Source of the DNA: Vitrella brassicaformis CCMP3155
Taxonomy: Eukaryota; Protista; Chromerida
Length of the DNA stretch: 64,000 nucleotides
Assembly: GCA_001179505.1 (NCBI GenBank)
Contig: CDMY01000973.1
Span: 1-64,000 of the forward strand
Reading direction: 5' to 3'
Part shown: positions 24,033-36,723 of the stretch, piece by piece
Position numbering within the stretch: the stretch's first letter is position 1
How the letters are laid out: every line of letters begins with the position of its first letter
The notes under the pieces: generated by a model
What the model saw: only the letters and a program-made list of their open reading frames with translations
The model's database searches: none
What the model was told of the DNA's origin: nothing
Made by a program: the position numbers and the translations under genes

Positions 24033-25677
24033 TCAATGGGCGCCCTGGCGCGATGCGGCAGTGGATGGCAAAGACGCAGCCGCTGCTGGGCTGCTGCCTT
24101 TCCTGTGAACGTCCATGAGGAAGGCCGCCAAACTACTCAGCTGCTGCACCTGCTCGGCCAGGCTGCACCTATCCCAGGGGAAAAGCCGAGTCGCCGCCTC
24201 GCTAATCTTCTCCAGCCGCCGGAGCGCCCCCTCTACCCACTCCAGCCCCCTCTCCCCTCTGAGCTCCCACAGCCCCTCCTTGCCGCCAATGGGGTGGCCG
24301 TCGCTATCCATTAGATGCCGCCAATTGCCTCCCCACCAGTAGCTGAGGAAAGTCTGCGTCACATTTCTGTGCTGGTCGTAGGCCTTCTTGGCCTTCTCGT
24401 ACGCGACCCTCTGCTGCTGATAGGCGGCCTTGGCATCCTCGGCGGCGTCCTGGGGCGGCTCCTTCGGCGGCTGCGGCTCCACTGGCCAGTTGCCTTTGTC
24501 CCTCTCGAGCTTCTCGATGAACAGCTCGCTGCGCAGGGCATTGTGCAGGCTGCAGCCGAGGTTGAATGACGGCGTGCTGCAGCCGCACTCCCATCTTCGT
24601 CCCCTTGCCCACCAGCTGGTGATGCTCCCGCAGCGCCTTCTGTCTGTCCCAGATGTCGTCCCACCCGACCGGCCCCAGCTCGAGGATCTCGCCGCCCCAC
24701 TTGGCGAGGTCCTCCTGTGTGCCGTCAAAGGCGAGCTGCTCCGTATTGAAGAGCAGCTGCTCCGGCGCAGCGTGGTAGCACGTGTATGTGGGCAGCTGCT
24801 TCTCCTCCCTCTGGGCGGCCTTGCGGACGGGGATGAGTGCGGCGTGGGGGCAGGGAGGGGTAGGGACGGTGCCGTCGGCGGCGTGCATGCAGGGGCCGGG
24901 GGGCTTCACGACGCCCGTGTTAGCGAGGTCAATGAGGTATGTGTCGGGCTGCTCCTGCGCGTCGAGGGTGAACCAGTTGACGTAGATGTTGTTGGCGCAG
25001 TGGTCAGGGCACACCAGGCCGTCCTCCTCGAGGGCTATCCGCAGGGTCTCGGCCGCCCATTGGAACGCTCGCACGAGGTCTATGACCTGGAGGATGGTGG
25101 CCCTGGGGTTCCATCGGTGTGTGCGGGCGATGGCGGCCATGTTGTGCTTCATATCCCAAATCAACTCCCTCAGGCTGACGTAGTCGGGTGGCTGCGTGGG
25201 GTCTGACAGCGTCGAGACAAGACAAAGAAAGACGCCGTGAATGAGTACATTGATGGAGTGCAGCCCCCCTTCTTTTGATGCTCACCGTTGAGTGGCTGCA
25301 TCTCTATGTACAGGCAGGGCTTCGGGGCTGTGTCAGCCGACTCGCGATACATGGCGCCGTCTTGGAGGCTGGCATCCGTATAGCCGCAGAAACGGCTTCA
25401 GCTCCTTCCCCTCCCCCTACCTCTTGGCCTGCACCATGGCCATGCGCTTCCTCTCCACCTCCATCTCCCTCAAGGCAGTCCGCCATATAGGGCTGTCGTT
25501 GTCGAGAACCGCAATCTTGAAGGCCCGCCATTCCCCATTCACCACGCCTGCCCTGACGATGGCACGGGAGCCCTCGCCGAGCCGGTGGGACAGCTCCACC
25601 TGTTGGCCGTCGTGTGTGGTGAGGATGGGGTGGGTGGCCATCGTGGTGCTGCTCGCTGATGCACTACTAATGGCCAT
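24033..25677 (-). pseudogene. Atypical protein-kinase-like gene, copy A (disrupted)
   Basis: Motifs LGEGSRA, RAFK, CPDHCANN, IDLAN and HAAPE. Relative to copy C it has an in-frame TAG (25417-25419), frameshifts near 25350-25375 and near 24570, and a TGC-to-TGA stop at 24033. Confidence 0.7.
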
Positions 25678-26139
25678 GGACTAATGGCGTGGGAAGCCAG
25701 GGTACTGCTGCGCTCCGCTTCACGCCGACGGGTGGTACTTTGCAGTTGCTGCTGTTGCTGCGTTGCTTCTGCTGTTGTTGTCGCTGCTGTTTGCTGACAG
25801 TGAGCTCCGTTGCGCCTTCTTCTCCTCGATCGCAATTCTGCAAGCGGCCTCTCTACAGCCATGTGCGTGGAGGGGTGCGAAAGTTTTCCACAAAATATAA
25901 AATGCAAGCAGCGATCGAATCATCTGAGCAACACAAGAGGGAGGCGACGGGTGTCGCCTTGCCTCTGTAGGTGTGTCGTGTGTGTGTCCTGAAGGCCTGC
26001 TCACGTGACGCTCCTGGACCGGCAGGGGGCGAGCTACCTGCATATATAGTATGGATGGGTAACGAATGAATGCGTGTCTCTCTCTGTCTCTGTCTCTGTC
26101 TCTCTGTGTCTGCGCCCATCCGTCCCTTTATCACTTACA

Positions 26140-27170
26140 GCTGGTCGATAGCGTCGAGCTCGGCGATGATGGCATCGTACACGTCGTCGCCGAGGCGCCC
26201 GTATCCGAGGTTGCTGATGTAGCCATGCAGCAGATTCAGGCGATCCCGCACCTGGTTGCGAATCGGGCCTGATGGATGGATCAGAGAAATCAATCAGCCG
26301 ACACACATCCATACATACGTACATGGTCACACTGGTTGGCCGATGGATTATCGATCAGATAATGTGGTCCTTCTTTATCGCTCTCTCTGCCTTGCCTAGA
26401 GACGCACCGGGGGGGTTGCGCGCTTTCTCGTGTAGGAACTGCTGGAGGTTCTGAGAGCGGCGGGCGATCAGCGTCTCGCAGGCGGCGGCGAACTCCGGGC
26501 TGTCGGCATCCACGAAGTTGTCCCACATGTCCTGGATGTCGGCGGCGGCCTCGTTGACGCCGTCAATGTATCGGCAGTCGGGAGTGTCGACCAGGCAGCT
26601 CGTCATTGAGTAGAAGGCCATTGTCAAATCATCCCTACGTACGCACAAGGACAACATACGCACAGACAGACAGACAGACATGCTCACACGTATTCTGTTT
26701 GTGCAGGATGGTTTGTGGTGTGTGTACCGTTCGTACCTCGCGCTGGTCGGCAGAAGCGGATAAGTAAGAGGTCGTCCAATATAAAAAGCAGGCAGCGATC
26801 CCTGAACCAACGAAGCGATCCCTGAGCCCTGATGCCCGCAAATGCATCACTACTACCATCCTCCTGCTGCTCCTCCTCCTCATGATGACCACCACGCCGT
26901 CGCGTTCTGGAGGAAGGCCGGCTGCCCCCCTCCATTCTGCGTGTCCTCAGCGTCGAACCACAGCTGGTGCTCCACTGCCTCGAGCGAGCAGAACCGAAGC
27001 CGACCCACAAAAGCGATGAAGGAATTCGATAGAGCAGCCAGGCCGTGGTCGATCGCCTCGCCATTGTGGGCCTCTGGCGGTTGGGTTCCAGCTGTGGGTG
27101 AGGGGGAGGTGCCATACATGACGTCCCGTCAGCAGCGGCCGGAGGAGCCCTCCTTGCCGTCGCCCGACTG
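26140..27170 (-). pseudogene. Possible decayed gene with helical coding-like exons
   Basis: Exon-like blocks DDLTMAFYSMTSCLVDTPDCRYIDGVNEAAADIQDMWDNF... and GPIRNQVRDRLNLLHGYISNLGYGRLGDDVYDAIIAELDAIDQL bounded by splice-like sites. I could not build an intact frame. Confidence 0.3.
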
Positions 27171-34692: not shown

Positions 34693-34732
<40 letters not shown>

Positions 34733-36723
34733 GAACGTACGGCGGTCGGGATGGTTGCTAATCACAGCATCAGTCTGCTGTGGGATGGGCGTGTGGTGCA
34801 CGTCTGGGGCAGCAGGGACAGATGGCTCTCTGGCGTCTGCGGTGCCCTCCTCCCTCTCGTCAGTCTGCTCAAACACAGCCACCTGACCGGCATCTGCACG
34901 CAACACACATAGAGCATAAGAGCAGATGTATGCCACTGATTGCACTGACCGACCCCTGGCTACCCTGAGGCATACCCTGGTCAGCATGGCGGCTATTCAC
35001 AGCACCGGCCTGCGATGGAATGGCGGCCGCTAAAGGTGCTGGCGACGTGTCGGGCGACGCTGGTGGAGCGGGGCAGTGCATCTGGGGCGATGCGGCGGTC
35101 GATGGAACGGACGCCGCCGGTCCTGGGCTGCTGCCGGCCACCTTCGCCATTGCGATGTTCACCAGGTCGCCCGCCAAGCTGCGCAGCTCGTTGTCCACGT
35201 CAGCCAGGCTGCAGCGCTGGGTGGGCAACGGGCGAGTGGCTGCCTCACTCAGCCTCTCCAGCCGCTGGAGCGCCCCCTCGAGCCATTCCAGCCCCCTCTC
35301 CCTCCTGAGCTCCCACAGGCCGGCCTTGGCGTCGATGGGGTGGCCGTGCTCGTTCATGAGCTTCCGCCGACATTGCGGCCACCAGAAGGCGACTCTGGCC
35401 TGCTGCACCTCCTTGTGCTGCAGGACGGCCTTCTTGGCCGTCTCAAAGTCAGCCAGCTGCTGCTGGTAGGCGGTCCTAGCCTCCTCGGTGGCGCCGTGTG
35501 GCGGTTCGGTGGGCTGCTGCGGGAAGTCGGGCCAGTCCCCGGCATCCTTGGCCAGCTTGGTGGTGTACAGCTGGCTCCGCAGCGTGTTGTGCAGCGTGCA
35601 GCCGTAGTTGAAGGCCAGCGTCCGGTCGGTCAGCCAGAGGCCCTGCTTGGCGCCCTTGCCCACCACGTGGTCCTCTGCTCGCAGCGCCGCACGCAGCTGC
35701 AGATGCGTTCCAGAAACTCCACCCTCTTCTCCTCCGAAATCCACTGCCCGCCCCAGTCGAGGAGCTGGGGCGGCGACCCCACTCTCAGCCCCTCCATCAT
35801 GAGCATCAGCTGCTCCGGCGCAGCGTGGAAGCGGGTGTATGTGGGCAGCTGCTTCTCCTCCCTCTGGGCGGCCCTGGTCGTGGGAATGAGGGCGGCGTGG
35901 GGGCAGGGAGGGGTCGGGATGGTGCCGTCGGCAGAGTGCATGCAGGCGCCTGGCGGCTTGACGATGGCCGTGTTGCCGAGGTCGATGATGTAGGTGTCCG
36001 GCTCCTCCTGGAAGTCCAGGGCGTCCTTGTTGATGAAGACGTTATTCAGGCAGTGGTCGGGGCATACCAGGCCGTCCTCCTCCAGAGCTGCCCGCACCGT
36101 GCTCGTCGCCCAGTGCAAGGCGCGCACGAGTGCGATGCAGTCCTGCAGAATGGAGTCGGGGTCGCCTCGCTTCTTGGCCGCTATCCCCGCCATGTGCAGC
36201 TCCCACGACCAGATGACGGCATCAAGGCTCACGTACTCCCAGGAGTCGCGGCGAATGGTGGGGTCTGATGACACGACAAGACACAGAAAGAATGAAGCCA
36301 TTAGTGAGTGCATGGATGGAGTGCGTTTCCCTCCCTCCTGTTCTCACCTTTCAGAGGCTGCATGGCTATGTACAGGCACTCCTGTGGTGGGGCGCCCGAT
36401 CTCTCGCGATATGCCGCCGGATGCTGGGGGTTGGTGGCGGCGTCATACAGCCTGAGGAATGGCTGCATCGCTTTCCCCTCCCTCTCCCTTCTGGCCTGCA
36501 CCGTGGCCATCCTCTCCCTCTCGATGTCGAGCTCGGCGCAGAGGGTCCTCCAGACGGCCTTGGTCTTGTCGGTGCGGATGACCATTTTGTATGCGCGGAT
36601 GTGGCCGTCCACCTCTCCCGCCCTCACGACGCCGCGTGAGCCTTCGCCCAGGAGGTAGGGGAGCTGCACATGTTTGCCCTCAAGCGTCGTGAGGATGGGA
36701 TGGTCGGGCTGCTGCTGCATCAT
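34051..36723 (-). CDS. Atypical kinase-like gene, copy C: kinase + helical region + linker + Trp-rich module (two 1-nt frameshifts in the assembly)
   Basis: Motifs LGEGSRG, RAYK, CPDHCLNN, IDLGN and HAAPE. First intron at the same position as copy A. Phase-consistent introns link to ...DAGQVAVFEQ... and RGQVFNAP...KAVLLGDIK...WKWNP...RRT*. Frameshifts near 35700 and 34155. Confidence 0.7.

What the first reader, a model, noticed from the sequence alone, without database searches (positions are those of the whole stretch)
24760..36065. Atypical kinase family with a CPDHC catalytic loop and a Cys/His activation-segment insert
Seen in both copies (24760-25600 and 35815-36650): GEGSR(A/G) loop, beta3 Lys, catalytic loop LVCPDHC(A/L)NN, DL(A/G) in place of DFG, then a ~50-aa segment with conserved CMH...CPH before HAAPE. 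The C-lobe is unrecognisable and contains a Pro/Glu/Lys helical insert. Established: ePKs use HRDxKxxN, and here the Asp and the Asn at +5 are retained while His, Arg and Lys are replaced by Cys, Pro and Cys. Inference: a lineage-specific, possibly active kinase family with redox- or Zn-sensitive control via 2Cys+2His in the activation segment.
Basis: partly seen in the sequence, partly recalled or inferred. Interest (0 to 1): 0.72.

Follow-up and report, generated by a model that had tools for sequence, protein, structure and literature searches.

The report
Vitrella-private divergent protein-kinase gene family
Two neighbouring genes in the alga Vitrella brassicaformis belong to a species-private family of about 40 very diverged protein-kinase genes that keep the core catalytic residues behind an odd catalytic loop. 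Both copies here are damaged, and the proposed zinc/redox switch is not a feature of the family.

Summary

No Pfam model matches, but the fold is a complete two-lobed protein kinase. The AlphaFold2 model has pLDDT 88.6, and VIA-align gives Z 21-24 against whole kinase chains (PknB, RAF, ACVR2A, STK40).

The family looks private to Vitrella brassicaformis. An exhaustive search of 1.84 billion protein representatives returned about 20 proteins, and all ten looked up trace to Vitrella. The genome holds about 40 loci.

Across the paralogues the beta3 Lys, alphaC Glu, catalytic Asp, Asn at +5, DFG Asp and APE Glu never change. The HRD Arg position varies, and the catalytic-loop Lys is absent everywhere. 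Intact members are therefore probably atypical active kinases, but this is inferred and not shown.

The CMH/CPH quartet occurs only in three close copies, all of them broken, so the Zn/redox idea is not supported as a family feature.

Copy A is a pseudogene (in-frame TAG plus two frameshifts). Copy B has one frameshift, confirmed in other DNA data sets.

Most members also carry a Trp-rich C-terminal module with no known fold match. The scan flagged similar divergent kinase-like families elsewhere in this genome.

The parts
34095..36723 (-). Copy B, whole gene as annotated (database model P0002, 753 aa): kinase-like domain, low-complexity linker, Trp-rich tail
36348..36720 (-). Copy B exon 1: N-lobe (G-loop GEGSRG 36631-36648, beta3 RAYKM 36583-36597, PFLRLY 36445-36462, hinge QPLK 36349-36360)
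36265..36347 (-). Copy B shared GT..AG intron, 83 nt, at the same position in all four close copies
   Evidence: spliced out in database models
35813..36264 (-). Copy B kinase core: alphaE, catalytic loop LVCPDHCLNN (36041-36070), IDLGNT (35969-35986), Pro-rich activation segment with CMH (35936-35944) and CPH (35897-35905), HAAPE (35813-35827)
35664..35744 (-). Copy B frameshift zone. HAAPE and VGKGAK lie in different frames. The annotated model bypasses the shift with a GT..AG 'intron' that removes the conserved WGG segment
   Evidence: 843-nt contigs covering 35022-35864 are identical in three runs of two studies, with no indels
35073..35663 (-). Copy B C-lobe: VGKGAK, alphaF-like YGCTLHN (35586-35606), Pro/Glu/Lys helical insert, GLEW (35283-35294), RCSLA (35202-35216)
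   Evidence: helices in the paralogue model
34152..34394 (-). Copy B Trp-rich C-terminal module (GGWKWNP 34242-34262, WEVR 34179-34190)
24033..25677 (-). Copy A, pseudogene (database model P0003, 464 aa, skips the lesions with invented introns); no tail module downstream
25417..25419 (-). Copy A in-frame TAG, followed in the same frame by conserved coding sequence (GEGKELKPFLRLY)
25340..25377 (-). Copy A frameshift 1 (5-nt gap relative to copy B, just after PFLRLY)
25203..25285 (-). Copy A shared GT..AG intron, 83 nt
24760..25017 (-). Copy A catalytic loop LVCPDHCANN (24988-25017), IDLANT (24916-24933), CMH (24883-24891), CPH (24844-24852), HAAPE (24760-24774)
24561..24594 (-). Copy A frameshift 2 (5-nt gap relative to copy B, between VGKGTK and the alphaF-like LGCSLHN)
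27894..28177 (-). Orphan, frameshifted copy of the Trp-rich tail module, with no kinase-like domain upstream of it

Best explanation
The two loci are tandem paralogues of a gene family that looks private to Vitrella brassicaformis, with about 40 loci. The family encodes a highly diverged but complete eukaryotic-protein-kinase (ePK) fold.

Domain layout of a full member:
- An N-terminal kinase domain of about 500 aa, with no leader sequence.
- A long, Pro-rich activation segment of about 56-58 aa that is confidently modelled as ordered.
- Helical inserts between alphaEF and alphaF, and between alphaG and alphaH.
- A low-complexity Pro/Ala/Gln linker.
- A Trp-rich C-terminal module of about 65 aa (beta-sheet plus helix) with no known fold match.

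Mechanism (inferred). Intact members bind ATP and Mg through the G-loop, the beta3 Lys-alphaC Glu pair, the Asn at +5 and the DFG-position Asp. They transfer phosphate through the catalytic Asp. They do this as non-RD kinases whose catalytic loop (consensus C-x-D-H-x-x-N-N) has no HRD His or Arg and no basic residue at D+2 or D+4.

Evolution. The family evolves by fast birth and death. Copy A is a pseudogene. Copy B carries one real frameshift, so it is either a young pseudogene or is rescued by a new intron.

My sub-confidences: ePK fold 0.97; private to Vitrella at this level of recognisability 0.85; copy A dead 0.9; intact members catalytically active 0.5.
For: Fold:
- AF2 model of P0001:1-530 with 18 paralogues: pLDDT 88.6, pTM 0.87.
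- Foldseek: at least 500 PDB matches at E<=0.001, and the 50 listed are all protein kinases.
- VIA-align: Z 23.7 for STK40 (285 of 293 residues, 3.4 A), 21.8 for PknB (260/263, 2.9 A), 21.4 for CRAF (260/264, 2.8 A). All 1000 chains scored Z>=8.
- ESM Atlas: the structure rows and nearly all feature rows are Pkinase clusters.
- The family profile against PDB sequences gives 257 hits at E<=10. The top 60 are all kinases (A-Raf at 5.6e-4) and align the G-loop, beta3 Lys and alphaC. The catalytic loop aligns to RAF's 'RDLKSNNIFL'.

Distribution:
- phmmer against 1.84e9 representatives gives 21 hits. One of them is a chance match to a repeat protein.
- All ten clusters looked up trace to Vitrella. 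Two of them also hold unnamed JGI/IMG sequences from short contigs.
- In the genome there are 95 exon-level matches and about 40 loci with the catalytic region.

Catalytic residues:
- G22, K42, E68, D197, N202, D222, N225, P279 and E280 do not change in any aligned row. The HRD-His position is Cys in 11 of 16 rows, the Arg position varies, and D+2 is never Lys.
- The same Asp, Asn and Asp are kept in all loci recovered by hmmsearch of six-frame translations.

Expression and selection:
- One distant member, P0013, is identical to an MMETSP transcript ORF.
- dN/dS among the four close copies is 0.46-0.66.

Lesions. The copy B frameshift region is identical in contigs of three runs from two studies.

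Tail module: it lies downstream of at least 14 kinase-like loci. Its AF2 core pLDDT is about 90, and it has no fold match.
Against: - No Pfam kinase model matches any member, even at E<=1. The best is PF07714 at E 0.13-0.23 on one member.
- hhalign against one canonical Vitrella TKL kinase aligns only the N-lobe, at 79% probability.
- There are no biochemical data.
- No basic residue is available to hold the gamma-phosphate.
- The long ordered activation segment could block the substrate site.
- dN/dS is high for a kinase, and many loci have internal stops. These may be introns or decay.
- There is no RNA evidence for the window copies. The runs laid were DNA-like contigs, and P0001-P0003 have no MMETSP source.
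- Restriction to Vitrella rests on one single-sequence exhaustive search, not on an iterated profile search.
Confidence: 0.65

Rival explanations
1. Pseudokinase family. The proteins keep the fold, and perhaps nucleotide binding, but act as scaffolds or switches without transferring phosphate.
For: The HRD His and Arg and the catalytic-loop Lys are missing in every member. The top VIA-align hit is the pseudokinase STK40, although it is tied within about 2 Z units with active kinases. Constraint is relaxed, with dN/dS 0.46-0.66. The activation segment is unusually long and ordered.
Against: Pseudokinases usually lose at least one of the beta3 Lys, the catalytic Asp or the DFG Asp. Here all three, plus the alphaC Glu and the metal-binding Asn, never change across paralogues that are only 24-50% identical. 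Active kinases without a Lys at D+2 exist, for example tyrosine kinases and Haspin (my own knowledge, not tested here).
Confidence: 0.28
2. One reading: an active kinase family controlled by a redox- or Zn-sensitive 2Cys+2His site (CMH...CPH) in the activation segment.
For: All four residues are present in copies A, B and the L003 copy. The segment is confidently modelled as ordered in the paralogue (pLDDT about 88-94 for residues 230-260).
Against: The quartet is confined to one subclade of three copies, and all three carry disabling lesions. P0001 has SMC...PSH. More distant members have Leu, Ala, Arg, Tyr or Phe at these positions. Within the subclade the whole segment is nearly invariant, so keeping the four residues is not specific evidence. 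Geometry could not be examined.
Confidence: 0.05
3. A small-molecule (APH/choline-kinase-like) phosphotransferase rather than a protein kinase.
For: The catalytic loop fits the minimal D-x-x-x-x-N pattern without a Lys, as in eukaryotic-like kinases (the comparison is from my own knowledge).
Against: Every Foldseek and VIA hit shown is a protein kinase, with whole-chain alignment that includes alphaF to alphaI. The APE motif and an ePK-type C-lobe are present. Profile hits are to TKL and TK kinases.
Confidence: 0.02

Closest known systems
TKL-group eukaryotic protein kinases (RAF, MLK, IRAK4, activin/TGF-beta/BMP receptors, CTR1)
   Same: Complete two-lobed fold (Z about 21 over whole chains). 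The G-loop, A-x-K, alphaC Glu, catalytic Asp, Asn at +5, DFG Asp and APE are all present. The only sequence-profile hits are to this group and to tyrosine kinases. The loop 'D-x-x-x-N-N-[IV]-F' resembles RAF's 'DLKSNNIFL'.
   Different: No HRD His or Arg and no loop Lys. DLA or DLG replaces DFG. The activation segment is 56-58 aa, Pro-rich and ordered. There are extra helices after alphaEF and between alphaG and alphaH. No Pfam model reaches even E=0.1. A Trp-rich C-terminal module is attached.
Apicomplexan orphan kinase expansions (FIKK, ROPK/rhoptry kinases, WNG)
   Same: A lineage-restricted, fast-evolving, multi-copy kinase family in the same broad lineage (Myzozoa), with non-canonical motifs and a mix of likely active and dead copies. 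The properties of these three families are quoted from my own knowledge.
   Different: No sequence relationship was detected: the exhaustive search returned no named protein from any other organism. The G-loop is present here, whereas FIKK and WNG lack it. There is no FIKK motif. The kinase domain starts at residue about 5, so there is no room for a signal peptide or an ROPK-type N-terminal extension (read; no signal-peptide predictor was run).
STK40/Tribbles-type pseudokinases
   Same: Best single structural match (STK40, Z 23.7), and an altered catalytic loop.
   Different: Tribbles and STK40 have degenerate metal-binding and G-loop motifs (my own knowledge). This family keeps every ATP- and Mg-binding residue. 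The Z advantage over active kinases is only about 2.
Eukaryotic-like kinases with the minimal H-x-D-x-x-x-x-N loop (APH, choline kinase, RIO, Bud32)
   Same: The catalytic loop keeps only Asp and Asn, without a Lys.
   Different: The C-lobe here is ePK-type, with APE and alphaG to alphaI. None of these families appears among the structural or profile hits shown.

Membership tests
Eukaryotic protein kinase superfamily (Pfam Pkinase PF00069 / PK_Tyr_Ser-Thr PF07714) | Match to the Pfam HMM above the gathering score | tested here: not met
   No hit for either window copy or for 18 family members. The best is PF07714 at E 0.13-0.23 on one member, against a cut-off of 23.1 bits.
Eukaryotic protein kinase superfamily | Two-lobed kinase fold with alphaC, catalytic and activation loops, and alphaF to alphaI | tested here: met
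   AF2 pLDDT 88.6. VIA Z 21-24 at rmsd about 3 A over 255-285 residues, covering whole kinase chains. Tested on the intact paralogue P0001, which is about 50% identical to the window copies.
Eukaryotic protein kinase superfamily | GxGxxG loop, beta3 Lys, alphaC Glu | tested here: met
   GEGSRG in copy B and GEGSRA in copy A. K42 and E68 do not change in any aligned row. HMMER aligns this block to A-Raf and EGFR.
Eukaryotic protein kinase superfamily | HRDxKxxN catalytic loop | tested here: inconclusive
   The Asp and the Asn at +5 are kept in every aligned paralogue. His is replaced by Cys in 11 of 16 rows, the Arg position varies, and the Lys is never present. The chemistry-bearing residues are kept and the canonical motif is not.
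Eukaryotic protein kinase superfamily | DFG and APE motifs | tested here: met
   D222 does not change and is followed by L/H/A, then A/G, then an invariant Asn. The P-E of APE does not change. The Phe and Gly of DFG are not kept.
FIKK kinases | FIKK motif, absent G-loop, sequence similarity to Plasmodium FIKKs | tested here: not met
   A G-loop is present and there is no FIKK motif. The exhaustive search returned no named protein from any other organism.
ROPK (rhoptry kinases) | Signal peptide, N-terminal extension, similarity to coccidian ROPKs | tested here: not met
   The kinase domain begins at residue about 5 of the models, and there are no non-Vitrella homologues. No dedicated signal-peptide predictor was run.
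Structural Zn site (2Cys+2His) in the activation segment | Co-conservation of the four ligands across family members | tested here: not met
   All four are present only in P0002, P0003 and P0004. They are absent together from P0001 and from all more distant members.
Structural Zn site (2Cys+2His) in the activation segment | Tetrahedral geometry of the four side chains, and metal binding | not testable with these tools
   Structure prediction returns no coordinates, and no metal-site tool is available.

The most novel reading that the evidence does not exclude
Intact members are active kinases that work with a new catalytic-loop solution: Cys-x-Asp-His-x-x-Asn-Asn, with no HRD His or Arg and no basic residue for the gamma-phosphate. 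They have a permanently ordered, Pro-rich activation segment and are targeted by a previously unseen Trp-rich beta-module. Together they form a species-private, fast-turnover signalling or self-defence-like family of about 40 genes in a free-living relative of the apicomplexan parasites.
Probability: 0.3. Interest if true: 0.55.

Novelty: new variant of a known kind. Interest (0 to 1): 0.36.

Why it matters
Chromerids are the free-living photosynthetic sisters of the apicomplexan parasites, where private, fast-evolving kinase families (FIKK, ROPK) are central to host manipulation. A comparable private expansion in a free-living relative would show that this mode of kinase evolution does not depend on parasitism.

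The expansion is invisible to Pfam yet keeps every catalytic residue. It gives a natural test of how much of the HRD/Lys machinery a kinase can lose and still work. It also shows that domain-based kinome counts for such genomes are underestimates.

The two window copies themselves are of little functional interest because they are decaying.

Tried and rejected
- **Pfam** on all pieces, on long paralogue ORFs and on 18 members found no kinase hit. The PDB sequence search with a single protein found nothing relevant.
- **The search for homologous proteins**, run with one protein and then with the family alignment, returned only the three closest models, because low-complexity words filled the candidate list.
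With A2 it matched 598 pattern stretches, none of them a relative.
- **hhalign** of the family profile against one canonical Vitrella TKL kinase aligned only the N-lobe, at probability 79%. A first attempt failed on coordinates.
- **Sequencing runs.** No run on record as RNA held the stretch. The four runs laid gave unspliced, DNA-like contigs, so expression and the annotated lesion-skipping 'introns' could not be tested.
- **Tail module.** No Pfam hit, no Foldseek hit (best E 1.2), best VIA wide Z 3.9, and nothing usable in the ESM Atlas. These are generic small beta-sheet resemblances only.
- **Rejected:** assembly error as the cause of copy B's frameshift.
- **Rejected:** retroposition as the origin of the copies, because the intron is shared at the same site.
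- **Rejected:** Zn/redox control as a family feature.

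
Full report
**Source.** The window is bases 1-64000 of contig C973 (232 kb) of a 72,700,666-bp, 1064-contig assembly. The encoded proteins are records of Vitrella brassicaformis CCMP3155. The assembly size and scaffold number match the published genome exactly (PMC4501334).

**Observation.** The ORF list and a DNA alignment show two minus-strand paralogues.
- They align over about 1.8 kb at 79% mean column identity.
Exact coordinates come and are listed under 'parts'.
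- A shared 83-nt GT..AG intron follows the hinge 'QPL(N/K)' in both copies and in two further close copies on the same contig outside the window (L003 near 84.7 kb and L004 near 92.8 kb). The copies therefore arose by DNA duplication.

**State of the copies.**
- Copy A has an in-frame TAG at 25417-25419, followed in the same frame by conserved coding sequence. It also has two 5-nt gaps relative to copy B that shift the frame.
- The database model P0003 jumps over these lesions with short 'introns' that delete conserved kinase elements.
- Copy B has one frameshift between HAAPE and VGKGAK, at 35664-35744. The model P0002 bypasses it with a GT..AG 'intron' that removes the conserved WGG segment.
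- Contigs of three runs from two studies cover 35022-35864 with no difference, so the frameshift is real and not an assembly error. Those runs behave as DNA: they retain the intron and have contigs up to 225 kb. They therefore say nothing about splicing or expression.
- L003 is frameshifted inside the catalytic loop.
- Only L004 (P0001, 817 aa) is an uninterrupted frame.
- Pairwise dN/dS among the four close copies is 0.46-0.66, with dS 0.39-0.82. This indicates weak purifying selection, mixed with decay.

**What it is.**
- No Pfam model matches the window copies, the intact paralogue, or any of 18 family members.
- A single-sequence PDB search is also blank.
- An AlphaFold2 model of P0001:1-530, built on an alignment of 18 paralogues, is confident (pLDDT 88.6, pTM 0.87).
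- That model is unambiguously a protein kinase. Foldseek gives at least 500 PDB hits at E<=0.001, and the 50 listed are all protein kinases.
- VIA-align gives Z 21-24 at about 3 A over 255-285 residues. This covers essentially the whole chain of STK40, PknB, CRAF/BRAF, ACVR2A/ALK5/BMPR2, CaMKII and phosphorylase kinase, and model residues 2-489.
- The ESM Atlas agrees, both by language-model features and through its own structure.
- A profile of the family finds 257 PDB sequences at E<=10. The top 60 are all kinases of the TKL and TK groups, with A-Raf at 5.6e-4. They align the G-loop, beta3 Lys and alphaC, and the catalytic loop aligns to RAF's 'RDLKSNNIFL'.
The Pro/Glu/Lys stretch is a long helix inserted between alphaG and alphaH (residues 387-413 of the model).

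**Family and distribution.**
- An exhaustive phmmer search of 1.84 billion representatives returned only 21 proteins at E<=0.001. One of them is a chance match to a repeat protein.
- All ten clusters looked up trace to Vitrella records. Two of them also hold unnamed JGI/IMG sequences from short contigs.
- One distant member, P0013, is letter-for-letter an MMETSP transcript ORF, so at least part of the family is expressed.
- In the genome the family profile gives 95 exon-level matches. The catalytic region gives 48 matches at about 40 distinct loci, often in tandem groups.
- I found no paper that describes the family. The genome paper mentions kinases only in passing.
- UniProt auto-labels five of the models seen here, including both window copies, 'Protein kinase domain-containing protein'.

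**Conserved chemistry.**
- In the 18-row alignment (24-50% identity to P0001), nine positions do not change in any aligned row: the first G-loop Gly, the beta3 Lys, the alphaC Glu, the catalytic Asp, the Asn at +5, the DFG-position Asp, the Asn three residues after it, and the Pro-Glu of APE.
- hmmsearch over six-frame translations of 30 loci shows the same Asp, Asn and Asp wherever the region is covered.
- The non-canonical positions behave differently. The HRD-His position is Cys in 11 of 16 rows and otherwise Leu, Tyr or His. The Arg position varies freely. The D+2 position is Gly, Cys, Phe, Tyr or Ala and never Lys. The D+4 position is usually Asn.
- The family signature is thus C-x-D-H-x-x-N-N ... 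D-(L/H/A)-(A/G)-N, not 'CPDHC'.
- Keeping all the nucleotide, metal and base residues over this much divergence is what an active phosphotransferase predicts. It is unusual for pseudokinases. This is an inference, not a demonstration.

**The Cys/His idea.**
- CMH...CPH occurs only in copies A, B and L003.
- P0001 has SMC...PSH, and more distant members have unrelated residues.
- What is conserved across the family is a Pro-rich scaffold (PGP...DG..P.PP...AAL.P...E.Q.P..T...PE), which AF2 models as ordered.
A subclade-specific metal site cannot be excluded, but the only carriers are broken genes.

**Extra module.**
- P0001 and P0002 end in a Trp-rich segment (GGW.WNP...WE.W...WEVR.A.QD).
- It recurs on the same strand, 0.2-1.5 kb downstream of at least 14 kinase-like loci.
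- AF2 gives a four-stranded sheet with core pLDDT about 90, followed by a helix.
- No Pfam, Foldseek, VIA-align or Atlas match is meaningful.
- The window holds a third, orphan and frameshifted copy at 27894-28177. Copy A has none.

**Verdict.** This is a real, correctly observed, lineage-private and highly diverged ePK family with an unusual catalytic loop and an attached module of unknown fold.
- I class it as a new variant of a known kind.
- The window's two members are decaying.
- The Zn/redox mechanism is not supported.
- Two other notes of this scan describe divergent kinase-fold families elsewhere in the same genome, so this kind of thing has been flagged before on other DNA of this organism.

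Noticed in passing
window 27894-28177 (-): An orphan, frameshifted copy of the family's Trp-rich C-terminal module lies upstream of copy A, with no kinase-like domain attached. Copy A itself lacks a tail. This suggests rearrangement or partial deletion within the tandem array.
   Followed up: partly
window 27205-27660 (both strands): Long ORFs made of WMDG/WMHG-type repeats on one strand and HPSIH repeats on the other. This is a simple-sequence tract between the two kinase-like copies and is probably not coding.
   Followed up: no
contig C973 about 82-84 kb (outside the window; database model P0004, residues 1-200): The 1169-aa model that includes the L003 copy starts with a different kinase-like segment ('HGDCKLTN...IDFNRA', the minimal H-x-D-x-x-x-x-N type). 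It may be a separate neighbouring gene that was merged into the model by the gene predictor.
   Followed up: no
contig C973 102843-103343 (+), outside the window: A fifth, fragmentary N-lobe copy of the family with two in-frame TGA codons. This is more evidence of birth-and-death turnover in this array.
   Followed up: no
window 34000-36800: Marine-sediment metagenome runs of 2023-2025 hold up to 61% of the sampled 31-mers of this stretch. Near-identical Vitrella-like DNA therefore occurs in environmental samples.
   Followed up: no
L025, L039, L041 (contigs C859 and C436), ends of tail modules: Several tails end in a Gly/Ala/Ile-rich stretch ('G.E.IGK.IA..F.G') just before the stop codon. It could be an amphipathic or membrane-associating helix.
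   Followed up: no
database models P0005 and P0007: These models contain the kinase-like unit twice in tandem. They are probably two adjacent paralogues fused by gene prediction.
   Followed up: no
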